From Octopus sinensis (lineage: Eukaryota): DNA of 23,013 nt. Location of the stretch: NCBI RefSeq assembly GCF_006345805.1, contig NW_021836740.1, positions 1-23,013 of the forward strand, in the 5' to 3' direction. The notes beneath the pieces are model-generated. The model ran no database searches. It had not been told where the DNA came from and saw only the letters and a list, made by a program, of their open reading frames with translations. Below are positions 82 through 23,013 of the stretch, piece after piece. A program made the position numbers and the translations under genes. Position 1 is the stretch's first letter. Every line of letters begins with the position of its first letter.

Positions 82-2639
82 ATTGGCCCGAATGTCAGAT
101 GGCCAAGGGTCTTTCTCTCCCAGGAATGACAAGATGTGAACGAGGACAGGCGAGGTCCCTCCTGAACCTCACCAACACCCTGTACATGGAGCAAGTAATA
201 CTCCAACCACCAGAGCAGGTAACACACTGGATCTCTGCTTCACAAATAATATGGATCTCATCCATAATGTGAAAGTGACACCGACACTACTCTCGGATCA
301 CAACATGGTAGAGCTGACCATGTACGGGCCAAAAGAGAGCACGGACATGCAGCCTACAAGAAACCCTCAGAATCTTTCCAGCTTGAACTTCAATAAGCCA
401 ACTGAAACAAATTGAGAAAGAGATTCTCAAACAAAACTGGCCTGAATGTCTCTCCTCGCCGGACATCGACATGATACTTCAACAATTCATGTCTGTAATG
501 CAAGCCATATGCTACAAATGTGTCCCAGAGAGAAAGGCCACTGTACACAAGAACAAATCCCCAGAGAGAGGAAAATTTTAATGAGACGGCGTATAAAAAT
601 TTGAAATCGCCTACACAAACAAATTGAAAGCAGTGAAAAGTCCCGCCTGAAAATAAAACTGTTGGAAATTGAAAATTGTCTGCAACTCTCCCATGAGAAG
701 GAAAGAGCAGACAAAGAAGCCTGGGCTATAGACAACATAAAAACTAACCCCAGAGCTTTCTACAGGTATGCCAAAGAAACAGCTACGGTGCACTGTAGGA
801 TAGGGCCACTCCTTGAAAAGGATGGCACACTCACAGGAAAACCAATCCCGGGTAAGTGAAATACTGAATGAACAATTCAAGAGTGTTTTCACTCCACCCC
901 TTGGGCATTTCCAAATCAGCAATCCAACTGACTTCTTTACCACTGCAGATATAGAATCAGAGGCAGCGACGATAAATTACATCAATATAAAGGAAGACGA
1001 TGTAATAAAGGCTATAGATGAAATGAAAATAGACTCAGCTATTGGCCCCGATGGATTCCCGGCAATCCTCCTAAAAGTATGTAAGAGAGTCTTAGCAAGA
1101 CCCACTGCAGTTCCTCTTTCAGAGCTTCCTTGCAGCTGGCAAACTTCCAAGAAAACTGAAGGAAGGTAAATATGCCCTATTCATAAAGGAGGTAGCAGAG
1201 CGGAGGCCAAGAACTACAGACCTATCTCTCTGACCTCACACATCAGCAAGGTCATGGAACGAATAGTCAGAAGGAAACTAATCACCTTCCTTGAAGAAAA
1301 TGACTTGCTGCCTGACACCCAACATGGTTTCCGACCAGGAAGAAGCTGCTTAACTCAGCTCCTACAACACTATGACTGGGTGCTGAAACAACTGCTCAAC
1401 CACTCAAATGTGGAAGTCATATATCTCGACTTTGCAAAGGCCTTTGATAAAGTCGATCATGGAATGATATGTCACAAACTGCGTGATCTTGGCATAGTTG
1501 GAAAACTAGGAGAATGGCTTCACGACTTTCTGAAGAATAGAAGTCAGTGAGCGGTGTTCCACAGGGCACTGTTTTGGGACCACTACTGTTCATAATGGCC
1601 CTCTCAGACATGCCCTCAGCCACGCGGAGAGCCACGATCACAAGTTATGCAGATGATACAAAAGTTTCACAGGCAATACAGAACCCTGAAGACACTAGGC
1701 ACCTGCAATATGAGCTGGACGAAATATACAAGTGGGCTGAAAAGAATAGCATGCAGTTCAATGCTGAAAAGTTTCAAGCTTTATACTATCAGCATGCAAA
1801 ACTGAATGCAATACCCAAGGAATACACTGGACCCGGAGGATTGCAATCCCAGAGGCACAATCAGTGCGTGACCTGGGTATTCACATGAGTGATGACGCGA
1901 CCTTTCATGTACATGTTGCTAAACTGACAATGAAATGCAGACGGCTGGCTGGATGGATTCTTAGAACCTTTAGAACAAGAGAACAAGAAACCATGATGGT
2001 CCTCTGGAAGACACTTGTCCTAAGTCACTTTGACTATTGCTCTCAGCTATGGTCACCATCCAGTGTCAAGTTGATCACAGAAATTGAGGCGATCCAACGA
2101 AGCTACACAAAGAAGATAGCCTCTATGCAGAATGTAAGCTACTGGGAAAGACTCGAGATTAAAATTATATTCCCTGGAGCGTAGGCGGGAAAGATATGCC
2201 ATAATATACATCTGGAAGATCCTGGAGGGAAGTGTCCTGAACTTTGGCATCGAGAGTTACGCAAATGCCAGAACTGGGCGCCACTGCGTGGTGCCTAGGA
2301 CTCCAAACTTGCCATCAAGATGTAGGACAAGATTCTGTGATAGCCTGGGCTTCCGAGGCCCACAGCTCTTCAATATCCTCCCGAGAAACCTGAGAGACCT
2401 GCATGGGGTGGATACAGATGTGTTTAAAATGGAGCTGGATCTCTTCCTGTCAGGTGTCCCAGATGAACCAACTTCACGGCAGGAGGGGCAGATGAGGGCA
2501 GCTGCATCGAACTCTCTCATGCACCAAATAGCAGTTGCTAGAAAGCCTCCATGAAGTGAAACCAAGTAGCAACACCAAATGGCGGTGCCCCAGCATGGCC
2601 ACAGCTCATAAGCTGAAACTAGAATCAATCAATCAATCA
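82..2639 (+). mobile_element. 5'-truncated CR1/L2-group non-LTR retrotransposon (LINE)
   Basis: APE C-terminal motifs (PTRAGNTLDLCFTN, SDHNMV), RT motifs (QHGFRPGRSC, YLDFAKAFDKVDH, GVPQGTVLGPLLF, YADDTK), short 3' UTR and (AATC)4 tail at 2623-2638. Exact clade within the CR1 group not resolved. Confidence 0.92.
83..2554 (+). pseudogene. LINE ORF2 (endonuclease C-terminus plus reverse transcriptase), frameshifted
   Basis: ORF fragments 662-859, 813-1169, 1254-1550, 1547-1888, 1864-2184 and 2288-2554 join into one ORF2. About 15 codons appear to be missing between FLKNRSQ and SGVPQG near 1549. Confidence 0.9.
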
Positions 2640-2966
2640 TATATATACATATACATACATATATATATACATATACATACATATATATATATACATACAT
2701 ATATACATATACATACATATATACATATACATACATACATATATATATATACATACATACATATATATACATATATATATATATATACATACATATATAT
2801 ATATATATACATACATATATATATATATATATATACATATACATACATATATATATACAAATACATACATATATATATACATATACATACATATATATAC
2901 ATATACATACATATATATATATACATACATATATATATATATATATACATACATATATATATACAT

Positions 2967-2997
<31 letters not shown>

Positions 2998-3069
2998 CAT
3001 ACATATATATATACATATATATATACATATATATACATATATATATACATATTATATACATATATATAC

Positions 3070-3125
<56 letters not shown>

Positions 3126-3639
3126 CATATACATTTATATATATATACATACATATATATATATATACATATATATATACATATATATATATATATACAT
3201 ACATATATATATATATATACATATATATACATATATATATATATACATTTATATATATATACATACATATCTAATATATATACATACATATATATATATA
3301 TACATACATATATATATATATATACATACATATATATATATATATACATTTAATATATATACATACATATAATATATATACATACATATATTATATATAC
3401 ATACATATATATATATATACATACATATACATATACATACATACATATATATATACATATACATACATATATATATACATATACATACATATACATATAC
3501 ATATACATACATATATATATACATATACATACATATATATATACATATACATACATACATACATATATATATACATATACATACATATATATATACATAT
3601 ACATACATACATATATATATACATACATATATATATACA
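2640..3639. repeat. 1-kb compound (TA)n/(TACA)n/(TATACA)n microsatellite
   Basis: Nearly pure T/A/C short-period repeat between the LINE tail and the Helitron end. Confidence 0.97.
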
Positions 3640-4477
3640 CTAGCAGAATTGCCCGGCGTTGCTCGGGGCTGAATTGCTTGAAAGTACTGTTAATGATTGC
3701 ACTGAATTATGATGATTATTCAGGCAAATATTGAAATAAGCTTACGGTGGGAGATAAGGACTTAACGCCAAACGTGTGCCATTGCATTGTTTTGGGTAAC
3801 CAAATTTCTGATGAGCATTATAGGGCACTAACTTTAAGTTTGAGAAAGTGTGGTGGTAGTCCGGGTGCTCAAAGGAATTGAGTACCTCTATTGGATAGTT
3901 GATGACGTCCTCTGGGTCAGGAGTTGTATCGATAGACTGATATACATCGACTTCCCCAGGAATGAGTTTTAGCATTTCATCATTAATATGGTGAACAGTT
4001 TTATTCCTCGGGGCCAGTATAGCCTTTTTGCCAATCCAATCCATATTCTGATAATTAGCTTGTAAATCTGGGAAACTGCATCTCTGAGATCAGAAGGCGT
4101 CTTAACAATGGTACAAATGGAATCGATGGCAATATTACCATTTTCATCCCCTGGTATTTTGCCTTCGCCAAGTGCAAGGAGGGTGTGAGGAAATGCTGGT
4201 GATGTGATATTACGTCGCATATGAGCACGCATATTGGTGTGAAGTTTGAGAGTTACTTCCGTTTATTTTTAAAAATGCATTAAAATGGAAAAAAATGATG
4301 GTAAATTATTTGTAAAATCATAGACTCATCGTAGACGCGCGCTAATACCCAGAAGGGCTCGATATGAATCACGACTATAAGATACCCGGTTTTGGTTAAA
4401 CTGCATCGCAAAATGTGGGAGTAGTTAGGAATCTAAATCGGAGTAGACAGACACACAACCTTTCTTTTATATATAAA
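3640..4477 (-). mobile_element. Non-autonomous Helitron with internal helicase remnant
   Basis: Minus-strand 3' end CCCG-AGCAACGC-CGGG hairpin, 8 nt, CTAG, then T at 3639. Pif1 fragment is on the same strand. The 5' end reads TTTATATATAAAAG, without the canonical TC. Confidence 0.85.
3742..4259 (-). pseudogene. Helitron Rep/Hel Pif1-family helicase C-terminal fragment
   Basis: LKLHTNMRAH, LLALGEG, AILAPRNKTVHHIN, YPIEVLNS, (frame-corrected) PGLPPHFLKLKV and QCNGTRL motifs; several -1 frameshifts. Confidence 0.9.
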
Positions 4478-4529
4478 TACATACATACACACACACACAC
4501 ACATACATGCATACATACATATACACATA

Positions 4530-5114
4530 AACCGAGTAAAAAATTTTAGTTATCTCTCTCTTTCACACATTACTCTCTCTGTCTCTTCACACACACTAAC
4601 AGAAGCACTTCACTTACACAACATACTGTCTGTCTCCCACACTCCATCAAACACACACACACACACATGTACATCAATGAGTCCCATGCACGGTAACTTC
4701 AAAGGAACTTCCCTCGTCATACAATCGCTTTCTCTTAGTCTCTTTCGCTCTCATTACTTATGTAAAAAAATAAAAGTTTTTTCTATGTGTCTAAAGAGGA
4801 AGTGGGAGGCAGAGTGAAAGAATCACTCACTACAGTAAGTGAATTACTTTCATTTTATTCCTTGCCCACTGTGTGTGTGCGTTTGCGTGTGCTGTAAACC
4901 AGACTAAGAAAAGCATTTGACACACACACCAGAATGTAAGTTTTCTGTAAATTTTGCTTAATTGGAGTTTAAATTTTAAAAACTGGACCTGGCATGACGC
5001 GATGCCTTGTACTCTCAAAACTGCTAGGTAAATTGTAATTGAAGAAATCCTATATTGTAGATTTGTATAACTCCCAAAGGGAGGCAGATAAAATCTGCCT
5101 TTTATAATAAGAGA
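4530..5114 (-). mobile_element. Helitron-like element (5' terminus only supported)
   Basis: Minus strand begins A|TCTCTTATTATAAAAG, followed by a 7-bp hairpin GGCAGAT-AAA-ATCTGCC (5083-5099). No own CTRR end found; left boundary approximate. Confidence 0.45.
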
Positions 5115-5249
5115 TATACATACATACATATACATATACATACATACATATATATATACATATACATACATACATATATATATATACATATACATACATA
5201 CATATATATATACATATACATACATCATCATCATCATCATCATCATCAT
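5115..5249. repeat. TACA/TA microsatellite followed by (CAT)9
   Basis: Direct reading; (CAT)9 at 5223-5249 is the tail of the adjacent minus-strand element. Confidence 0.95.
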
Positions 5250-6280
5250 TTAACGTCCGCTTTCCATGCTAGCATGGGTTGGACGGTTCAACTGGGGTCT
5301 GGGGAGCCCGAAAGCTGCACCAGTCCAGTCAGATCTGGCAGTGTTTCTACAGCTGGATGCCCTTCCTAACGCCAACCACTCCGAGAGTGTAGTGGGTGAT
5401 TTTATGTGCCACCGACACAGGTGCCAGACGAGGCTGGCAAATGGCCACGCTCGGATGTGTTTTTTATGTGCCACCGACACAGGTGCCAGACGAGGCTGGC
5501 AGACGGCCACGCTCGGATGGTGTTTTTATGTGCCACCGACACAGGTGCCAGACGAGGCTGGCAGACGGCCACGCTCGGATGGTGTTTTTATGTGCCACCG
5601 ACACAGGTGCCAGACGAGGCTGGCAGACGGCCACGCTCGGATGGTGTTTTTATGTGCCACCGACACAGGTGCCAGATGAGGCTGGCAAACGGCCACGATC
5701 GGATGGTGCTTGTTACGTGCCCACAGCACGGAGGCCAGTCGATGCGGTACTGGCTACGCCACGTTCGGATGGTTTTCTTATGTGCCACGTGCCACCGGCA
5801 CTGGTACCACAAAGATACAAATTCCATTGATGTTCATCTATTTTGATTTGTTTTGATTTTCACTTGCCTCAACAGGTCTTCACAAGTGTCACAAGAAGGA
5901 AGGTATGCACAGGTGGACTGACTACGTCCCAGGTAGGGGCCATGGGTTATGGCCTGACTAGTCTTGCCGGGTCTTCGGATGGTGTTTTTATGTGCCACCG
6001 ACACAGGTGCTAGATGAGGCTGGCGAACGGCCACGATCGGATGGTGTTTGTCATGTGCCCACCGCACTGACTACGGCACTGATGGATTTCTTGTGTGCCA
6101 CAGGCACTGGTACCACAAGATACAAATTCCATTGATGTTCAACTATTTTGTCTATTTTGATTTGATTTGATTTTCACTTGCCTCAACCGGTCTTCACAAG
6201 TGTCACAAGAAGGAAGGTATGCACAGGTGGACTGACTAGTCTTGCCGTGTCTTCGGAAGGTGTTTTTATGTGCCACCGAC
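5223..6280 (-). mobile_element. RTE-tailed non-autonomous retroelement (family D), internally amplified
   Basis: Minus-strand end ...CCAACCCATGCTAGCATGGAAAGCGGACGTTAAA(TGA)n and internal GGCGTTAGGAAGGGCATCCAGC. Homologous copies at 14448-14847, 22100-22269 and about 9228-9265. RTE link inferred from tail type. Confidence 0.7.
5396..5706. repeat. 62-bp tandem minisatellite, five near-identical units
   Basis: ATGTGCCACCGAC starts at 5404, 5466, 5528, 5590 and 5652. Confidence 0.95.
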
Positions 6281-6402
6281 ATATATATATATACATATAC
6301 ATATATATATACATATACATACATATATATATATATACATATACATACATATATATATATATATATACATATATATACATATACATACATATATATATAC
6401 AT

Positions 6403-6435
<33 letters not shown>

Positions 6436-6614
6436 CATACATATACATATATATATACATACATATATATATACATATACATACATATATATACACATAT
6501 ATATACACGCGCGTATATATACACATATATATATATACACGCGCGTATATATACACATATATACACGCGCGTATATACACACATATATATATATACACGC
6601 GTATATACACATAT
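6281..6614. repeat. TA/TACA microsatellite with ACACGCGCGTATAT variants
   Basis: Direct reading; CGCG-containing units at about 6505-6605. Confidence 0.95.
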
Positions 6615-6678
6615 AATTACTTGAGACATGTAAGTTATCTTAAGGGTAGTGCAAGGGTAAAAAGGTTGAGAAACACTG
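6615..6678. mobile_element. Orphan hAT (Charlie-like) terminal fragment
   Basis: GGTTGAGAAACACTG (6664-6678) is a CAGTG-type TIR followed by CTCTATAT, which fits the NTCTANAN target pattern. Partner end not found. Confidence 0.4.
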
Positions 6679-7593: not shown

Positions 7594-7746
7594 TTATTAC
7601 CTCCACCTTAGCAAAGGTTGAGGTATTGTTTTCAGTCATGTTTGTGTTTGTCCGTGGACAAGATATCTCAAGAACTGCTGAATGGATGTGAATGAACTGA
7701 CATTGGTGTTGCCTTGGAGGAGGTTTATGCTCTCTAAGTACCCTTA
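7594..7746. mobile_element. HINE/DINE-1-like (Helentron-associated) short element
   Basis: 5' CCTCCACC with local hairpin ACCTCcACCTT-AGCA-AAGGTtGAGGT, 3' subterminal inverted CTTGGAGGAGG, T-rich flanks, internal GTTTGT repeats. Confidence 0.5.
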
Positions 7747-7757
7747 TTATTTTTATT

Positions 7758-8154
7758 AAGGTGGTGAGCTAGCAGAATCGTTAGCATGCTGGGCAAAATG
7801 CTTGGCAGCATTTTCATCTGTCTTTACATTCTGAGTTCAAATTCTGCTGAGGTCAATTTTACATTTCATCCTTTCGTGGTTGATAAATTAAGTACCAGTT
7901 GCATACTGGGGTCGGTCTAATCAACTGGTCCCCTCCCACCAGAATCATTAGCATGCTGGACACAACGATTAGTAGCATTTTGTCTATGTTTACATTCTGA
8001 GTTCAAATTCTACTATGGTTGATTTGCCTCTCAACCTTTTGCATGGGGTCAATGAATTAAGCACCAGTTAAGTACTGGAGTTGATGTAATTGACTAGCCC
8101 ATTCCCCACGCCAAACAAATCACAGCACTTGTGCTTATAGTAGAAAGAATTATT
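7758..8154 (+). mobile_element. Two tandem family-B tRNA-derived SINEs (Nin/Deu-like middle domain)
   Basis: Head GGTGAGCTAGCAGAATCGTTAGCA, B-box GAGTTCAAATTC, middle GAGGTC...CATCCTTT...TAAGTACCAG; many copies in the window. Confidence 0.8.
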
Positions 8155-9344: not shown

Positions 9345-10110
9345 CTCTCTCCTCCCCGTCTCTCTCTCCTCTCTGCCTTTCTCTCTCTCCTCATCGTCTC
9401 TCTCTCTCTCCTCTCCTCATCGTCTCTCTCTCTCCTCTCCTCATCGTCTCTCTCTCCTCATCGTCTCTCTCTCCTCATCGTCTCTCTCTCTCCTCTCTGC
9501 CTTTCTCTCTCTCCTCTCTGCCTTTCTCTCTCTCCTCTCTGCCTTTCTCTCTCTCCTCTCTGCCTTTCTCTCTCTCCTCTCTGCCTTTCTCTCTCTCCTC
9601 ATCGTCTCTCTCTCTCCTCATCGTCTCTCTCTCTCCTCATCGTCTCTCTCTCTCCTCATCGTCTCTCTCTCTCCTACTCGTCTCTCTCTCTCTCCTCCTC
9701 GTCTCTCTCTCCTCTACTTGTCTCTCACTCTCTCCTACTCGTCTCTCTCTCTCCTACTCGTCTCTCTCTCTCCTACTCGTCTCTCTCTCTCCTACTCGTC
9801 TCTCTCTCTCCTACTCGTCTCTCTCTCTCCTCCTCGTCTCTCTCTCCTCCTCGTCTCTCTCTCCTCTACTCGTCTCTCACTCTCTCTCCTACTCGTCTCT
9901 CTCTCTACCTCTTATCTCTTGTCTTCCTGTCACTCTTTTGCCTGTCCCCTCTCTTTCATTCTCCTTCACTCCTCTTGTCTTCCTGTCACTCTTTTGCCTG
10001 TCCCCTCTCTTTCATTCTCCTTCACTCTGTCTCTCTCTCTGTCTCTCTCTCTCTCTCTCCATATTTCTTTCTCTTTCACCTCACACCCACTCTCTTGGCC
10101 ACCTCTCTCT
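9345..10110. repeat. CT-rich minisatellite / polypyrimidine tract
   Basis: Units CTCTCTCTCCTCATCGT, CTCTCTCTCCTCTCTGCCTTT (21-bp period, GCCTTT at 9499, 9520, 9541, 9562, 9583) and CTCTCTCTCCTACTCGT. Confidence 0.95.
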
Positions 10111-11233: not shown

Positions 11234-11720
11234 TTCGACCAAATCCAGTCACAAGGCTTTGGTCAACCTGGGGCTATAGTAGAAGGCACCTGCCCAAGGT
11301 ATCACATGGTGAGACTGAACCCAGAACCATGTGGTTGGGAAGCGATCTTCTTACCACACCATCACACCTGTACCTGGGTCTAAATAAATCCATCATTAAA
11401 TTTTTAAGTAGGAAGTTTTTGAGTTACTTTTTCTTAAGTTTCCTAAAAGCTATGTTAATAGTGACAAAATTTGTTATCTTACTAAATCTTTACACATTCT
11501 TAATTATTTTCGAAATTAATTAAAACAAATGAAGAAATGTGGTCATAAAAACATTAAAGTAAGTTAATTAAAACGTGTATAGTAATGTGCCAAATGGAAT
11601 TGTTAAAGGAATTTTGATGCTAAATCTCTCGTACATTGGTTCTGTCTTTTCTAAAATGTAATGGATAATGAAACTGATAGTGGAACTGTGATATAGTGTA
11701 TGTATATACTATACTGCAGT

Positions 11721-12027: not shown

Positions 12028-12478
12028 AGTGTGTGTATGATGATAATGTTGTGTGTGATAGTGTATGGTAGTCAATGGCATATATGTGGGTATATGTATG
12101 ATTGTGTGCAATTGTAATGCTTATGTGCGTGATAATGCACAACAATGAAACTATTAGTGTGGCAAGTTTTTGTTCCCTAGCTCTCAGGTTAGCCTTATCT
12201 AAACAGATCTGTAGTGAAAAGCATTCCAATCGTGACCTGCCATTCTGTTTTCTCCTGACTGTGTCTAATCAGGACAACATTATCCAGTGTGTCTTTCTCT
12301 TACGACGACAGCAGTATTTCATAAGAGATTTGACTGCTATTTCTAGTAGGTCGAGTGATTATGTAGTGGTGCCTTCATTGGCTCATAACACCCAAGTAGA
12401 AGAGAGCTGAACATCCCAACAAACTAGTGTAGTATCATTAAACTACCTGCCAATGTTTTTGTATTATTATATTTAGGT

Positions 12479-12910
12479 GAAGGCTGGTGAGTTGGCAGAA
12501 TGGTTAGCATGCTGGACAAAATGCTTAGCAGCATTTCATCTGTCTTTACATTCTGAGTTCAAATTTTGCCGAGGTCAGCTTTGTCTTTCATCCCTTTTGG
12601 GGTTAATAAAATAAGTACTAGTTAAGCACTGGGGTCAATGTTACTGACTAGCCCTCTCCCTCAAATTTCAGGCCCATACCTATAGTAGAAAGGCTAAAAA
12701 AGGCAGTGAGCTGGCAAGATTGTTAGCATGCTGGACAAAATGCTTAACAGTATTTCATCCATCTTTATGTTCTGAGTTCAAATTCCACCGAGGTCACCTT
12801 TGCCTTTCATCCTTTCTGGATCAATAAGCGCTGTTTGAAAACTGGAGTTGATGTAATCAACTTACATCCTCTCTGAAATTGCTGGCCTTGTGCCAAAATT
12901 TGAATCAATA
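12479..12910 (+). mobile_element. Two tandem family-B SINEs
   Basis: Heads at about 12479 and 12699; same head, B-box and middle motifs as 7758-8154. Confidence 0.8.
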
Positions 12911-13001
12911 TATTATATTTAGGTGATTTCGAAGTGGTTTGGCAAGTTAGTATGACCAAAAGTAGCTTAACTGTTGTTATAAGCTGTATTTCTCATTGTG
13001 A

Positions 13002-18182: not shown

Positions 18183-18237
<55 letters not shown>

Positions 18238-18705
18238 GAAGGCGGTGAGCTGGCAGAACTGTTAGCATGCTGGACAAAATGCTTAGAGGTATTTTGTCTG
18301 CCTTTATGTTCTGTGTTCAAATTCCACCAAGGTTGACTTTGCTTTTCGTCCATTCAGGATCAATAAAACAAGTACCAGTCGAGTACTGGGGATGATGTAA
18401 TTGACTCAGCCCCTTCCTCAAAAACTGCTGTCTCTGTGCTAAAATTTGGAACTATTATTATTCCGCCATGGTCAACTTTATCTTTCATCCTCTCAGGGTT
18501 GATAAAATAAGTACCAGTTGAACACTGGGGTTGATGTAATCAACTCATCCCCAAGCTGCCCTTGTGGTAAAAATTTGAAATATTAATTACTATTTAGGTG
18601 GCGAGCTGGCAGAATCATTAGCATGCTGGATGAAATACTTTCCAAGTTCAAATTCCACCAAGGTCGACTTTGCCTTTCCTCCTTTTGGGGTTAATTAATT
18701 AAGTA
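17958..18705 (+). mobile_element. Cluster of four family-B SINE copies or fragments
   Basis: Copies start near 17958 (with insertion), 18238, 18462 (3' half) and 18594, joined by (TTA)n tails. Confidence 0.78.
18186..18237. repeat. (TTA)17 microsatellite (SINE tail)
   Basis: Direct reading. Confidence 0.95.
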
Positions 18706-18966
18706 TATATATTATATATATATATATTATATATATATATATATATATAATATGTGTGTGTGTGTACAGAGGGGTGACATTTAGTAGAAATGAACTGGAA
18801 GTGATCCTCTTCAATAACTATCATGAACAGCAGTAGCTTTCTTCAAACAAATACATGTCGTTGATTGGTCGAAATTACCCAAATACAACAACTTTAACAT
18901 GAAATAACTTCTAAAATACAAAATTTTGTCAAAAACGTCGTTCAGAGTAAATTGAAGACCAGTTTA

Positions 18967-19029
18967 TGGGATTGCCTTAGGTTTCACGTCCATAAAGGGC
19001 TTAGCTTTATGGTGTATCATCAGATCCCA
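18967..19029 (-). ncRNA. Type I hammerhead ribozyme, cleavage triplet mutated
   Basis: UGGGAU-CUGAUGA-U-stem II (CCAUAAAG/CUUUAUGG)-GAAA-CC-UAA-GG-CA-AUCCCA; triplet is GCA instead of GUA. Confidence 0.7.
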
Positions 19030-19243
19030 AAACCTGTTGGCTTAAGGCCTGTCTAGTGAGGCTATAAAGGCCTATCCATACCAACATCTGATTTCTAAAA
19101 AACGCAAATAGGTCCCTAATCTTCTTCTTCTCAGATAAGACTAAAAACATATATAGGATAGACACCTTTAATTATGATAGGCTGCTAGAAAAAATATCAC
19201 ACAGAATTGTAGGCATGCAGAGAGGCCCTAAGCCAACAGGCTC

Positions 19244-19306
19244 TGGGATCTGATGATATTCCATAAAGGTAAGACTTTTATGGACCTGAAACCTAAGGTA
19301 ATCCCA
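19244..19306 (+). ncRNA. Type I hammerhead ribozyme with intact core
   Basis: Stem I UGGGAU/AUCCCA, CUGAUGA 19250-19256, stem II CCAUAAAG/UUUUAUGG, GAAA 19288-19291, stem III ACC-UAA-GGU, GUA site with predicted cut after 19300. Base of stem II is imperfect. Confidence 0.78.
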
Positions 19307-19332
19307 TAAACCAGCCTTATCTAACTTTAATA

Positions 19333-19586
19333 CATGGTCTAATCAAAAGTATCCAGACTGTTTCCATAGTAACGAAGATAAAGCACACAGAGTGAAACTG
19401 CTTGGTACAGATTGATCTTAAACTCTGCTGTACATGCGCACTAAGTTTTAACATTCTAACTCACTTCTGCTGTTTACAGCAGTGCTTGGGAGGAAAGGTG
19501 TATAATATGTGATCATCGCATTGACCATGGCAGAGAAAGTTGAGCAGAGAATTTGTATCAAATTTTGCCAAAAGCGTGGCGATACC
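19333..19586 (+). mobile_element. Mariner transposon 5' end, truncated by a SINE
   Basis: TA|CATGGTCTAATCAAAAGTATCCAGACT TIR-like end, then the transposase start. Confidence 0.75.
19527..19586 (+). pseudogene. Mariner transposase N-terminal fragment
   Basis: MAEKVEQRICIKFCQKRGDT matches the mariner EQRxxIKFC N-terminal motif. Confidence 0.75.
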
Positions 19587-19863
19587 TATTTTTTGTAAGC
19601 CTAGCACTTATTCTATCAGTCTCTTTTGCTGAACTGCTAAGTTACAGGGACATAAACACACCAATATCGGTTGTCAAGCAATGGTGGGGGTGGGGACAAA
19701 CATATATATACACCACAGGCTTTCAGTTTTTGCCCACCAAATCCACTTTCAAGGCTTTGGTTGGCCCAAGGCTGTAGTAGAAGACACTTGCCCAAGGTAC
19801 CATGCAGTGAGGACTGAATCCAGAACCATGTGGTTGGGAAGCAAGCTTCTTACCACACAGCCA
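19587..19863 (-). mobile_element. Family-A SINE (left member of inverted pair)
   Basis: Head TGGCTGTGTGGTAAG, CCTTGGGCAAGTGTC CORE-like segment, CTTGACAACCG domain. Confidence 0.85.
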
Positions 19864-19977
19864 TTTGAGAACTACTGTATGTTTTCTATACTGAGAATAT
19901 GTAGCTCTCACCTTTTTGACTGCATGTGTGTGTGTTCACGCACACATTATATATATAGGCACAACAGTGACTGTCCA

Positions 19978-20320
19978 TAGATGCAAGAGTGGCTGTGTGG
20001 TAGGTAGCTTGCTTACCAACAATATGGTTCCAGGTTCAGTCCCACTGCGTGGCACCCTGGTCAAGTGTCTTCTACTATAGCTTCGAGCCAACCAAAGCCT
20101 TGAAAGTGGATTTGGTGGGCAAAAACTGAAAGCCTGTGGTGTATATATATGTTTGTGTGTCTGTTTGTCCCCCCCCCACCATTGCTTGACAACCGATATT
20201 GGTGTGTTTATGTCCCTGTAACTTAGCAGTTCAGCAAAAGAGACTGATAGAATAAGTCCTGGAGTCAATTTGTTCAACTAAAGGTGGTGCTCCAGCATGG
20301 CCAGAGTCAAATGCCTGAAT
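19978..20320 (+). mobile_element. Family-A SINE, near full length (right member of inverted pair)
   Basis: Head to GGTGGTGCTCCAGCATGGCC tail. Confidence 0.85.
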
Positions 20321-20923
20321 ATATACACAGAGAGAGAGAGAGAGATAGTAAGAAAGTTAAATAATCAGACATGTTAGCTCATTCTAAAAAACAAAAAAAA
20401 AGTTGTTAAAAAAAAAACGAAAAGTTTAACTAGCATGTGTAATAGAAATTTATGGCTTTGGCACAACTGCCATATTCATTTTAGCAATTCTAGAATGAAT
20501 TATTTCTCTTTGCTTACATCTCTTGTCTCTTGGTGATGAATGTACATATATGGGAATACACCCCGCTCCCTCCCTTTGTCTCTAGCTTGACAGCAGTTAA
20601 GTCATTATAGCATATGCTAATGAGAGAATATAGGACTGTCAATTCTGGGTGATTTTGTTGTTTTTTATTTTCCTTTTCTTTGTTCTGGAAAGTGGAGGAG
20701 GGCTGTAGCCTAGAATTTCCCAGAACATTTTCATAGCTCCTTTTCTAGGTAAAGGTAAACTATTATCAGATAAAGTATCCAGCATGACAGTCAATCTCCC
20801 CCAACCTGAAGTAGTCATGGGGGGGGGGGGTTTAGCCCTTGACTCCATTTTGCTACCTTATTTCTGGTGAAATACTTTGCTTAGGTTTCAATTAATTCAA
20901 TTTTTTTTGTAAATAATGAATAG

Positions 20924-21340
20924 CATGGCTGTGTGATAAGAAGCTTGCTTCTCCACCACAGTGTTCTGGGTTCAGTCCCACTGTATGCAAGCATTATAGG
21001 CACAGGAGTGGCTGTGTGGTAAGTAGCTTGCTTACCAACCACATGGTTCTGGGTTCAGTCCCAGTGTGTGGCACCTTGGACAAGTGTCTTCTACTATAAC
21101 CTCGGAATGAGCAAAGCCTTGTGAGTGGATTTGGTAGACAGAAACTGAAAGAAGCCTGCTGTGTATGTGTGGGAGTCGGTGTTTGTTCCCTCATCACTGC
21201 TTGAGAACCAATGTTGGTGTGTTTGCATTCCTATAACTTTGCAGTTTGACAGAAGGAGACAAATAGAATAAGTACTAGGCTTAAGAAATAAATCCTGGGG
21301 TTGATTTGTTTGACTGAAACAAGTTAAAGAATAAAAGAAT
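20924..21340 (+). mobile_element. Family-A SINE head fragment plus near full-length copy
   Basis: Head-only piece 20924-20988; full copy 20996-21340. Confidence 0.8.
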
Positions 21341-21354
21341 TAACTTAGTCATTA

Positions 21355-21461
21355 TTACTCTTATGTTTCAGTCATTTGACTATGGCCATGCTGGAGCACC
21401 ACCTTAAGGGATTTTAGTTAAAGAAATCAACCCCATAACATTGTTTGTAAGCCTAATACTT
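21355..21461 (-). mobile_element. Family-A SINE 3' end
   Basis: TTTCAGTCATTTGACTATGGCCATGCTGGAGCACCACC. Confidence 0.75.
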
Positions 21462-21482: not shown

Positions 21483-21708
21483 TTTTTATTTCTTTATTGC
21501 CCACAAGGGGCTAAACACAGAAGGGACAAACAAGGACAGACAAACAGATTAAGTCGATTATATCGACCCCAGTGCGTAACTGGTGCTTATTTAATTGACC
21601 CTGAAAGGATGAAAGGCAAAATCAACCTCGGCAGAATTTGAACTCAAAACGTAATGGCAGACGAAATACCATTAAGCATTTCACTCAGCGTGCTAATGTT
21701 TGATCAGC
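21483..21708 (-). mobile_element. Family-B SINE with variant tail
   Basis: Reverse complement of the family-B middle (GAAAGGATGAAAGGC...GAATTTGAACTC). Confidence 0.75.
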
Positions 21709-21710
21709 AT

Positions 21711-21810
21711 GAGGCTATAGTAACAGACACTTGCCCAAGTAGCCACGCAGTGGGGCTGAACCTGGAACCATGTGGGAAGCAAGCTTTTTACGAAGACACC
21801 CATGTCTACA
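21711..21810 (-). mobile_element. Family-A SINE head fragment
   Basis: GACACTTGCCCAAG...CTGAACCTGGAACCATGTG. Confidence 0.7.
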
Positions 21811-22420: not shown

Positions 22421-22600
22421 TCATGGCTGTGTGATTGAGAAGTTTGTTTCCTAACCATATGGTTCTGAGTTCAGTCCCACAGCATGGTACCTTAGTCAAG
22501 TGCCCTCTACTATAGCCCCATACTGAGTGGATTTGGCAGATGAAAGCTGAAAAAAGCCCATCGTATATACATGCATGTGTGTGTCCTTGTCTTGACAGCT
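22421..22600 (+). mobile_element. Family-A SINE 5' half, decayed
   Basis: TGGCTGTGTGA...GAGTTCAGTCCCAC...GAGTGGATTTGG. Confidence 0.7.
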
Positions 22601-22752: not shown

Positions 22753-23013
22753 AATAATAATCCTTTCCCCTAGAGGCACAAGGCCTACAAAGTTGGGAGG
22801 GGGCTGGTTGATTACATTGACTCCAGTACTCAATTGGTACTTATTTTATTAACCCCGAAAAGATAAGCAAAGCTGACCTTGGCAGAATTTGAACTCAGAA
22901 CATAAAGACAGACAAAATTCTGTTAAGTATTCTGCCCGGTTTGTAAACGATTCTGCCAGCTTGCCACCTTAATAATAATAATGATTATAATCCTTTCTAC
23001 AAAAGGTACAAGG
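22753..23013 (-). mobile_element. Family-B SINE plus the 3' end of a further copy cut by the window edge
   Basis: GATTCTGCCAGCTTGCCACCTT head (reverse complement) ends at 22970; AATCCTTTCTAC starts the next copy. Confidence 0.78.

What the first reader, a model, noticed from the sequence alone, without database searches (positions are those of the whole stretch)
18959..19314. Twin outward-facing hammerhead ribozymes forming the inverted arms of a 348-bp element
Seen: two 89-bp inverted arms (79/89 identical, ungapped) enclose a 172-bp spacer and are flanked by CCAG on both sides. Each arm encodes a type I hammerhead on the strand reading outward. The right arm has stem I UGGGAU/AUCCCA, CUGAUGA, a long stem II, GAAA, stem III and a GUA site (cut predicted after 19300). 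The left arm has GCA at that site. Stem III, ACCU-A-AGGU, is self-complementary. Established: Penelope-like elements carry type I hammerheads in their terminal repeats, often in inverted arrangement, and short palindromic stem III variants cleave as dimers. Inference: a transcript from either strand would end in a ribozyme and could alternatively fold into an 89-bp hairpin that blocks it. This could be a compact ribozyme-bounded mobile unit or a self-cleavage/dsRNA switch. It could also simply be a 5'-truncated Penelope insertion with an inverted repeat. The base of stem II is imperfect in both arms, so activity is not assured.
Basis: partly seen in the sequence, partly recalled or inferred. 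Interest (0 to 1): 0.85.

Follow-up and report, generated by a model that had tools for sequence, protein, structure and literature searches.

The report
Decayed head-to-head Penelope-type hammerhead relic
A 364-bp inverted repeat in octopus-like DNA carries a hammerhead-ribozyme motif at each outer end, and it is most likely the old, decayed footprint of a Penelope-type retroelement that inserted as two truncated copies head to head, which is a known pattern rather than a new kind of element.

Summary
Two 100-nt inverted arms (18955-19054 and 19219-19318, 86% complementary) enclose 164 nt. Each arm, read outward, has the layout of a type I hammerhead.

The right arm has every invariant core base, a 6-bp helix I with a closing stem, a 10-bp helix II, a small palindromic helix III and a GUA site, with the cut predicted after 19300. 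The left arm has C at 16.1 (GCA), which breaks the NUH rule. Neither arm has the usual G10.1-C11.1 pair, so activity is doubtful.

Rfam finds no hammerhead here. It also misses real Penelope-like element (PLE) hammerheads that I fetched as controls, so that negative says little.

The same architecture appears in a weevil PLE and a lamprey PLE: outward-facing hammerheads at both ends, produced by an inverted 5'-truncated copy. Published work describes it too.

The best reading is a solo, roughly 14%-diverged relic of a head-to-head PLE-type, or PLE-mobilised non-autonomous, insertion. There is no PLE ORF in the window.

I could retrieve no sibling copies, so the family consensus, the copy number and the "distinct mobile unit" idea remain untested. 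The CCAG "target duplication" is ambiguous because it lies inside the helix I closing stem.

This is a known kind of feature and of low interest.

The parts
18955..19054 (-). Left arm. Read on the minus strand it is a degenerate copy of the hammerhead-bearing 3' end. Helix I is 19029-19024 / 18972-18967, CUGAUGA is 19023-19017, helix II is 19016-18986 and GAAA is 18985-18982. Position 16.1 is C (18974) and position 17 is A (18973).
19055..19218 (.). Unique 164-nt spacer. It has no inverted or direct similarity to the arms. It is presumably the upstream continuation of the longer of the two truncated copies, or filler DNA.
19219..19318 (+). Right arm. Read on the plus strand it holds a complete type I hammerhead layout.
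19238..19249 (+). Right arm, 5' strand of helix I: closing stem AGGCU (19238-19242), bulged C (19243) and UGGGAU (19244-19249).
   Evidence: part of the minimum-free-energy fold
19250..19256 (+). Core box CUGAUGA (C3 to A9). It is followed by an unpaired U at 19257, the extra nucleotide typical of PLE hammerheads.
   Evidence: PMC4209133
19257..19287 (+). Helix II: an A-U pair, a 1x2 internal loop, a 10-bp stem and a UAAGA loop. There is no G10.1-C11.1 pair.
19288..19300 (+). G12 A13 A14, then helix III ACC-UAA-GGU (a near-palindrome), then A17. Predicted cleavage is between 19300 and 19301.
19301..19317 (+). Right arm, 3' strand of helix I: AUCCCA (19301-19306), internal loop UAAACC, and closing stem AGCCU (19313-19317).

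Best explanation
The feature is a solo, old relic of one insertion made by Penelope-like-element (PLE) machinery in an octopod genome. It consists of two 5'-truncated copies of the hammerhead-bearing 3' end of a PLE, or of a PLE-mobilised non-autonomous derivative, joined head to head.

The inferred mechanism is this. The PLE RT/GIY-YIG protein cuts both strands of the target, and each strand primes reverse transcription near the 3' end of the element's RNA. The two cDNAs grow towards each other and are joined. One copy is about 100 nt long. The other is about 264 nt, made of an arm plus the spacer.

Each outer end therefore carries the sense-strand hammerhead, which reads outward and lies a few tens of nucleotides from the terminus.

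In the parent element the ribozyme would process multimeric or read-through transcripts, probably as a dimer through its palindromic helix III. At this locus it has no role and has decayed. The left copy lost U16.1, the base of helix II is irregular in both copies, and the arms now differ at 14 of 100 positions.

Shown here: the inverted repeat, the hammerhead layout, the decay, the absence of a PLE ORF, and the same architecture in real PLEs. Inferred: PLE parentage, a single-event origin, and the loss of function.
For: 1. All invariant hammerhead positions are present, in the right order and with three helices, in the right arm. The same layout is in the left arm. Chance is very unlikely.
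2. The motif has traits reported for PLE hammerheads. These are an extra nucleotide between A9 and 10.1, a long helix II and a small palindromic helix III (PMC4209133).
3. Controls fetched here show the same architecture. In the weevil PLE L008, an identical hammerhead lies on the + strand at 6308-6342 and on the - strand at 3309-3275, both reading outward. This arises because an inverted 5'-truncated copy (3219-3762) mirrors the 3' end (5854-6398) at 99-100% identity. The lamprey locus L009 has two head-to-head PLEs with outward hammerheads.
4. Literature. [quoted passage not shown] A purified PLE protein cleaves and extends both target strands, and the hammerhead sits near the reverse-transcription start (PMC11167929). 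Dual PLE hammerheads 100-700 bp apart on opposite strands have been seen in Schistosoma (PMC4209133).
5. The host is an octopod. Octopus genomes carry about 30 Penelope families (PMC13282606).
6. The arm differences (9 transitions, 5 transversions) include a core-breaking change and non-compensated changes in helix II, as neutral decay predicts.
Against: - No sibling copy and no octopod PLE with similar termini could be retrieved, so parentage rests on architecture, not on sequence homology.
- There is no PLE ORF in the 23-kb window. The flanks are SINE-like repeats.
- The highly conserved G10.1-C11.1 pair of PLE hammerheads is absent from both arms. The control PLE hammerheads have it, together with a contiguous helix II and no helix III hairpin. 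This motif is therefore atypical even before decay.
- Rfam models give no hammerhead hit, although they also miss the control PLE hammerheads.
- No clear target-site duplication lies outside the 100-nt arms.
Confidence: 0.6

Rival explanations
1. A distinct non-autonomous family whose unit is the whole two-arm element. This would be a foldback, MITE-like or inverted retrozyme that is mobilised as a unit, with CCAG or ACCAG as its target-site duplication.
For: A 5-nt direct repeat, ACCAG, lies at symmetrical positions next to the arm ends. The element is compact, solo and not attached to any ORF. Its size is in the range of non-LTR retrozymes and MITEs (PMC7229834).
Against: There is no second copy in the window or in any searchable collection. 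The CCAG bases pair in a helix I closing stem in both arms, and the arm homology continues 4 nt past them. The chance that random flanks would pair in the same register in both arms is 0.15%. Real PLE insertions produce the same shape without being foldback elements.
Confidence: 0.12
2. A secondary rearrangement. Either a single hammerhead-bearing repeat was later duplicated in inverted orientation, for example by template switching, or two independent insertions of the same family landed head to head.
For: Inverted pairs are not rare in this window. A head-to-head pair of SINE-like repeats lies 285 bp downstream at 19603-20260. The 14% divergence between the arms would also fit two different source copies.
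Against: Both arms stop at the same outer position and have the same 100-nt extent. A single event explains this more simply. The PLE mechanism yields this form directly.
Confidence: 0.13
3. Not a hammerhead at all. It would be a chance hammerhead-like motif, or a box C/D snoRNA-like sequence, inside the terminal inverted repeat of an unrelated transposon.
For: Rfam gives no hammerhead hit. The best sub-threshold hits are box C/D snoRNA models (snoZ122, 22 bits against a 38-bit cut-off, E about 0.2), because of the terminal stem plus UGAUGA. The G10.1-C11.1 pair is absent. At relaxed stringency, chance motifs occur about 0.05 times per Mb.
Against: At the observed stem lengths there were no chance hits in 258 Mb. 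The box D candidate, CUGA, exists only in the right arm and lies 11 nt from the terminal stem instead of next to it. What both arms do keep is GAAA and the helix III hairpin. Rfam also misses genuine PLE hammerheads.
Confidence: 0.08
4. A host-used RNA switch. Transcripts would either self-cleave at the terminal ribozyme or fold into a long hairpin that feeds small-RNA or RNA-editing pathways.
For: The whole-element RNA folds into an 88-bp hairpin (-161 kcal/mol on the + strand, -182 on the - strand) that buries the ribozyme. The isolated right arm folds as the hammerhead three-way junction, within 2.5 kcal/mol of its minimum free energy.
Against: Any inverted repeat folds this way. One ribozyme is broken and both are atypical. 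There is no evidence of transcription, of conservation, or of selection on the arm differences.
Confidence: 0.04

Closest known systems
Hammerhead ribozymes in the terminal repeats (pLTRs) of Penelope-like elements (Cervera and de la Pena 2014, PMC4209133)
   Same: Type I topology. An unpaired nucleotide between A9 and 10.1. A long helix II. A small palindromic helix III that would need dimerisation. Location near the element terminus. Occurrence as dispersed solo motifs, and as pairs on opposite strands 100-700 bp apart.
   Different: There is no G10.1-C11.1 pair; here it is A-U followed by a 1x2 internal loop. Helix I is longer (6 bp plus a closing stem). There is a real 3-bp helix III hairpin rather than the bare ACGU of the control PLEs. 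No link to a PLE ORF has been shown.
Complex PLE insertions with an inverted 5'-truncated copy (Craig et al. 2021, PMC8557442), as seen here in Sitophilus oryzae locus L008
   Same: Two copies head to head, with 3' ends and hammerheads facing outward. The arms are mirror images that end at nearly the same outer position.
   Different: In L008 the main copy is full length (2.6 kb with ORF), the arms are 99-100% identical, and a 30-nt tail is visible on one side. Here both copies are severely truncated (about 100 and 264 nt), the arms are 86% identical, and no tail or target duplication can be recognised.
Animal non-LTR retrozymes (PMC7229834; bioRxiv 10.64898/2026.07.22.740005)
   Same: Short (170-400 nt), AT-rich, non-coding units with a type I hammerhead. 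They are thought to derive from PLE pLTRs and to depend on PLEs.
   Different: Retrozymes are direct tandem repeats whose transcripts cut themselves into monomers and circularise. Here the two motifs are on opposite strands, so one transcript never holds two sense ribozymes. There is no tandem repeat.
Miniature inverted-repeat transposable elements (MITEs)
   Same: Size of about 350 bp, long terminal inverted repeats, no ORF, and a possible short flanking direct repeat.
   Different: The arms encode a full hammerhead layout on the outward strand, which MITE biology does not explain. The candidate duplication lies inside the arm homology. No other copies are known.

Membership tests
Hammerhead ribozyme, type I | Invariant core C3 U4 G5 A6 N7 G8 A9 and G12 A13 A14 | tested here: met
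   CUGAUGA and GAAA are exact in both arms.
Hammerhead ribozyme, type I | A15.1-U16.1 pair and an NUH cleavage triplet | tested here: inconclusive
   Right arm: met (GUA, A17 at 19300). Left arm: not met (C at 16.1, position 18974, giving GCA).
Hammerhead ribozyme, type I | Three helices around the core, with helix I open | tested here: met
   Helix I is 6 bp plus a 5-bp closing stem, helix II is 10 bp, and helix III is 3 bp. The minimum-free-energy fold of the isolated right arm contains helices I and II, and the full hammerhead fold lies 2.5 kcal/mol above it.
Hammerhead ribozyme, type I | Helix II stacked on the core through a 10.1-11.1 pair, almost always G-C | tested here: not met
   With U19257 bulged, the 10.1-11.1 pair is A-U, followed by a 1x2 internal loop in both arms. 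The control PLE hammerheads have G-C.
Hammerhead ribozyme, type I | Match to the Rfam hammerhead covariance models | tested here: not met
   No hit at the gathering threshold or at E<=10. The test has little power for this subtype, because genuine PLE hammerheads in L008 and L009 are missed too.
Hammerhead ribozyme, type I | Site-specific self-cleavage | not testable with these tools
   Needs in vitro transcription.
Hammerhead ribozyme, type I | Core conservation and compensatory changes among related copies | tested here: inconclusive
   Only the two arms are available. Four one-sided changes keep pairing (three in the closing stem, one in helix II). One pair (10.2-11.2) differs on both sides without compensation, and one change breaks 16.1.
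Penelope-like element insertion | Hammerhead on the sense strand close to the 3' terminus of the copy | tested here: met
   The cut site is 18 nt from the outer arm end in both arms. The distance is 56 nt in control L008.
Penelope-like element insertion | An inverted 5'-truncated copy abutting the other copy head to head | tested here: met
   The arms are mirror images with a common outer end and an abrupt inner end. Controls L008 and L009 have the same layout.
Penelope-like element insertion | Sequence homology to, or linkage with, an RT plus GIY-YIG ORF | tested here: not met
   There is no PLE ORF in the window. The only RT is a frameshifted LINE at 813-2184, and the flanks are SINE-like. 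Homology to octopod PLE termini could not be tested, because no octopod PLE was among the best 120 hits.
Penelope-like element insertion | A 30-40 bp tail at one end, with a variable target duplication | tested here: inconclusive
   Similarity beyond 18955 and 19318 is about 7 of 14 positions. The only symmetrical direct repeat is ACCAG, which lies inside the arms.
Non-LTR retrozyme | Direct tandem repeats of 150-450 bp, each with a sense hammerhead | tested here: not met
   There is no tandem repeat at the locus. The two motifs are on opposite strands.
MITE | Terminal inverted repeats plus a target-site duplication of fixed length, in many copies | tested here: inconclusive
   Inverted repeats are present. 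The duplication is ambiguous. Copy number could not be tested.
Box C/D snoRNA | Box C next to the 5' strand of the terminal stem, and box D (CUGA) next to its 3' strand | tested here: not met
   CUGA occurs only in the right arm (GUGA in the left) and lies 11 nt from the stem. Rfam scores are 22 bits against a cut-off of 38.

The most novel reading that the evidence does not exclude
The two-arm unit is the founding copy of an octopod family of hairpin-forming, hammerhead-bounded non-autonomous retroelements that move as a whole. Alternatively, the host uses it as a switch between self-cleavage and double-stranded RNA. The unusual A10.1-U11.1 pair and internal loop of helix II would then be a functional variant rather than decay.
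Probability: 0.06. Interest if true: 0.6.

Novelty: new member of a known kind. Interest (0 to 1): 0.2.

Why it matters
The significance is small. The locus adds a cephalopod example to the known link between hammerhead ribozymes and Penelope-type retroelements. It also shows what a very short twin-primed relic looks like after long decay.

Two practical lessons follow:
- Rfam's hammerhead models do not detect PLE-type hammerheads. They missed genuine ones in control loci, so annotation pipelines will leave such motifs unlabelled.
- Outward-facing twin hammerheads in inverted arms should be read first as a by-product of PLE integration, not as a new element class.

If a genome-wide search showed many complete two-arm copies, the finding would become more interesting.

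Tried and rejected
1. Sibling copies by DNA pattern. Two scans of JGI metagenome contigs gave 0 hits and 1 chance hit (L006). One scan of bacterial and archaeal genomes gave 1 chance hit (L007). One scan of viral contigs gave 3 chance hits (L001-L003) with no helix I partner.

2. Sibling copies by protein. A query made of all six reading frames of the element found nothing at E<=10 among 5.8 billion proteins.

3. Octopod DNA. The window's own RT ORF is not on record. A 21-kb Argonauta hians locus (L005) and a 796-nt metagenome contig (L004) hold no copy.

4. Octopod PLE parent. A search with the Poseidon_Ac RT-EN returned insects, reptiles and lamprey but no cephalopod in the best 120. I used these hits as controls instead.

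5. Literature search for the exact core strings found only unrelated primers.

6. A copy of the post-cleavage tail inside the spacer, which would have indicated a full-length retrozyme-like unit. The alignment was not better than shuffles (83 of 500 shuffles scored as well).

7. Continuation of the inverted repeat into the spacer. Not better than shuffles.

8. Box C/D snoRNA reading. Rejected; see the rival explanations.

9. microRNA-precursor hits (MIR4208, MIR2630; 28-33 bits against cut-offs of 140-144). These only reflect the long hairpin.

Full report
**Source and setting**

The window is animal DNA rich in interspersed repeats and microsatellites. A frameshifted LINE reverse transcriptase at 813-2184 has its best named relatives in Octopus (65% identity) and Argonauta hians (77% over half the query). 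The source is therefore an octopod cephalopod. Octopus genomes are about two-thirds repeats and include some 30 Penelope families (PMC13282606). The giant squid genome was reported to hold 235 Rfam hammerhead_1 loci and Penelope elements (PMC6962438).

**The observation**

The repeat finder reports one long inverted repeat: arms 18955-19054 and 19219-19318, 100 nt, 86% complementary, 164 nt apart. blastn gives 93 nt at 88%. The repeat ends abruptly on the inner side. The spacer has no significant inverted or direct similarity to the arms. There is no other copy of arm or spacer in the window.

**The hammerhead layout**

Read on the + strand, the right arm runs as follows:
- AGGCU (19238-19242), then bulged C
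- UGGGAU (19244-19249)
- CUGAUGA (19250-19256)
- helix II (19257-19287)
- GAA (19288-19290)
- ACC-UAA-GGU (19291-19299)
- A17 (19300), then the predicted cut
- AUCCCA (19301-19306), loop UAAACC, then AGCCU (19313-19317)

A descriptor of my own requires the two core boxes, helix I abutting both of them, a helix II hairpin, an A15.1-U16.1-closed helix III and H17. It finds this site and nothing else in the window.

The isolated 85-nt RNA has helices I (with the closing stem) and II in its minimum-free-energy fold. The full hammerhead fold is only 2.5 kcal/mol above that.

The left arm has the same layout on the minus strand, with CUGAUGA at 19023-19017 and GAAA at 18985-18982. It has C at 16.1 (18974), so both the A15.1-U16.1 pair and the NUH rule are broken.

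**Is it chance?**

First-order Markov sequence with the window's composition gave these results:
- no hit in 400 simulated windows;
- 13 hits in 252 Mb at relaxed stem lengths of 5, 4 and 3 bp;
- 3 hits in 258 Mb at 6, 4 and 3 bp, and none once helix II had to reach 6 bp.

The observed helix II has 10 bp. By extrapolation, well under one such motif is expected by chance per octopus-sized genome. PLE-derived hammerheads number hundreds to thousands per animal genome (PMC4209133). The motif is real in the sense of descent from a hammerhead. The simulation does not model real repeats, so these figures are rough.

**Weak points of the ribozyme**

PLE hammerheads characteristically have one unpaired nucleotide between A9 and 10.1 (PMC4209133). 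If U19257 plays that part, the two arms read as follows:
- right arm: A10.1-U11.1, a 1x2 internal loop, then 10 bp;
- left arm: A-U, C-G, a 1x2 loop, then 8 bp.

Even so, the highly conserved G10.1-C11.1 pair is absent from both arms. The pair at 10.2-11.2 differs on both sides without compensation (U/C against C-G). Activity of either copy is therefore doubtful.

Published PLE hammerheads cleave poorly in vitro even when intact, and do so as dimers. In one PLE the ribozyme was dispensable for insertion in vitro (PMC11167929).

**Rfam**

No hammerhead family is reported at the gathering threshold on the whole window. None appears at E<=10 on 481 nt or on each 91-nt arm.

To learn what this negative is worth, I fetched real PLE loci with the Poseidon_Ac RT-EN sequence from the supplement of PMC11167929. 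My descriptor finds textbook PLE hammerheads in them:
- L008: CUGAAGA-U-GCUAGC...GCUAGC-GAAAC-GUU
- L009: CUGAUGA-A-GGCCGC...GUGGCC-GAAAC-GUC

Rfam reports none of them at the gathering threshold over 38 kb. It also reports none at E<=10 on 91 nt around the L008 motif. The Rfam negative in the window is therefore uninformative for this subtype.

The sub-threshold hits that do appear are two kinds. Box C/D snoRNA models score 22 bits against a cut-off of 38, because of the terminal stem plus UGAUGA. microRNA-precursor models score because of the long hairpin. A C/D reading fails because CUGA exists only in the right arm and lies 11 nt from the stem.

**What the architecture means**

The control loci answer this directly.

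In the weevil locus L008 a full PLE (ORF 4001-6286) ends with a hammerhead at 6308-6342 on the + strand. An identical hammerhead lies at 3309-3275 on the - strand, and both read outward. The cause is an inverted 5'-truncated copy, 3219-3762, that mirrors the last 544 nt of the element (5854-6398) at 99-100% identity. A 30-nt extension is present on one side only.

In the lamprey locus L009 two full copies lie head to head, with outward hammerheads at 1737-1703 (-) and 6425-6459 (+).

This matches published descriptions:
- a purified PLE protein cleaves and extends both strands of its target, and starts reverse transcription just downstream of the hammerhead (PMC11167929);
- pairs of PLE hammerheads 100-700 bp apart on opposite strands were noted in Schistosoma in 2014 (PMC4209133).

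The window's element is the same shape in miniature. Two copies are truncated to about 100 and about 264 nt. The hammerheads are 18 nt from the outer ends and there is no ORF.

**Age and decay**

In the young control insertions the two arms are 99-100% identical. If the window's arms were likewise identical at birth, 14 differences in 100 give a Jukes-Cantor distance of 0.155 between the arms, or about 0.08 per arm. On the calibration used for Octopus repeats (0.09 for about 25 million years; PMC13282606), that is on the order of 20 million years. This is an inference.

The differences comprise 9 transitions and 5 transversions. They include one core-breaking change, one lost pair at the tip of helix II and the uncompensated 10.2-11.2 pair. 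Four one-sided changes keep pairing through G-U, three in the closing stem and one in helix II. Three out of three in the closing stem has a chance of about 1 in 8 for transitions. That is not evidence of selection.

**Boundaries and the CCAG**

ACCAG occurs at 18958-18962 and at 19310-19314.

Against a target duplication:
- the arm homology continues 4 nt further (CCTT against TCTT);
- these bases form the 3' strand of the helix I closing stem in both arms (AGGCU/AGCCU on the right, AGGUU/GGUCU on the left);
- with random flanks, a closing stem of 5 bp or more in the same register in both arms arises in 0.15% of trials, and in the right arm alone in 12%.

For a duplication: two mismatches within 4 nt is high for arms that are 86% alike. 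I leave this undecided. The ends are uncertain by about 8 nt.

**Folding alternatives**

A transcript of the whole element folds into an 88-bp hairpin (-161 kcal/mol on the + strand, -182 on the - strand) that buries the ribozyme. This follows from any inverted repeat. The two ribozymes lie on opposite strands, so they can never be in one transcript and cannot dimerise with each other. A homodimer of two right-arm RNAs is predicted at -55.1 kcal/mol, against -49.2 for two monomers.

**What could not be done**

None of the searchable DNA collections holds octopod genomes. Pattern scans, a six-frame protein search and one Argonauta locus gave no sibling. No cephalopod PLE was among the best 120 relatives of Poseidon_Ac. 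Four points therefore remain untested:
- the copy number;
- the family consensus;
- linkage to a PLE body;

**Verdict**

The best-supported explanation (confidence about 0.6) is an old solo relic of a head-to-head PLE-type insertion with decayed ribozymes. This is a new example of a known kind, not a new class. Interest is low unless a genome-wide search reveals a family of complete two-arm units.

Noticed in passing
window 19603-20260: A second head-to-head inverted pair lies 285 bp downstream of the element. It is made of two copies of a tRNA-like SINE family, 80.6% identical over about 660 nt, with heads facing each other around 19865-19984 and tails outward. Other copies of the family lie at 11235-11375, 20998-21283, 21699-21791 and 22423-22520. 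There was no Rfam hit at E<=0.1 over 19500-21400 and no ARAGORN tRNA in the window.
   Followed up: partly
L008 3773-3830 and 6341-6398 (Sitophilus oryzae PLE): The full-length weevil PLE copy begins within 2 nt of the predicted hammerhead cut site. A 58-nt direct repeat starts at U16.1. This suggests that the template RNA's 5' end was made by ribozyme cleavage in vivo.
   Followed up: partly
L008, L009 and window: Rfam release 15 hammerhead models miss genuine PLE-type hammerheads, both at the gathering threshold and at E<=10 on 91-nt pieces. Annotation pipelines that rely on Rfam will not label this subtype.
   Followed up: yes
window 3745-4044 (- strand): A 100-aa ORF matches the helicase region of the Helitron transposase Helraiser (7lcc, residues 1277-1371, E=5.8e-7). 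It is a Helitron fragment and has no Pfam hit.
   Followed up: partly
window 813-2184 (+ strand): A frameshifted non-LTR (LINE) reverse transcriptase is split over four ORFs in three reading frames; RVT_1 is matched by two of them (1254-1547 and 1547-1885). Its nearest named relatives are in Octopus and Argonauta.
   Followed up: partly
window 7744-8109, 12462-12925, 18218-18705, 21552-21701, 22775-22991: A second abundant short interspersed repeat family is present, with copies 72-85% identical. One block ends about 250 bp upstream of the element, so the element is hemmed in by SINE-like repeats on both sides.
   Followed up: no
window 5395-5721, 2638-3639, 6279-6615, 9345-10048: A 62-bp tandem repeat (5.3 copies, 95% matches) has related units out to about 6064. 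There are also long (AT)/(ACAT)-type microsatellites, and a CT-rich low-complexity block with strong strand skew (GC skew -0.53).
   Followed up: no
window 19193-19210 versus 19248-19260: The spacer contains AAUAUCA-CA-CAGA, which is complementary to UCUG-AUGAUAUU across the right-arm hammerhead core. In the fold of 19150-19325 this pairing replaces helix I. It is probably coincidence.
   Followed up: no
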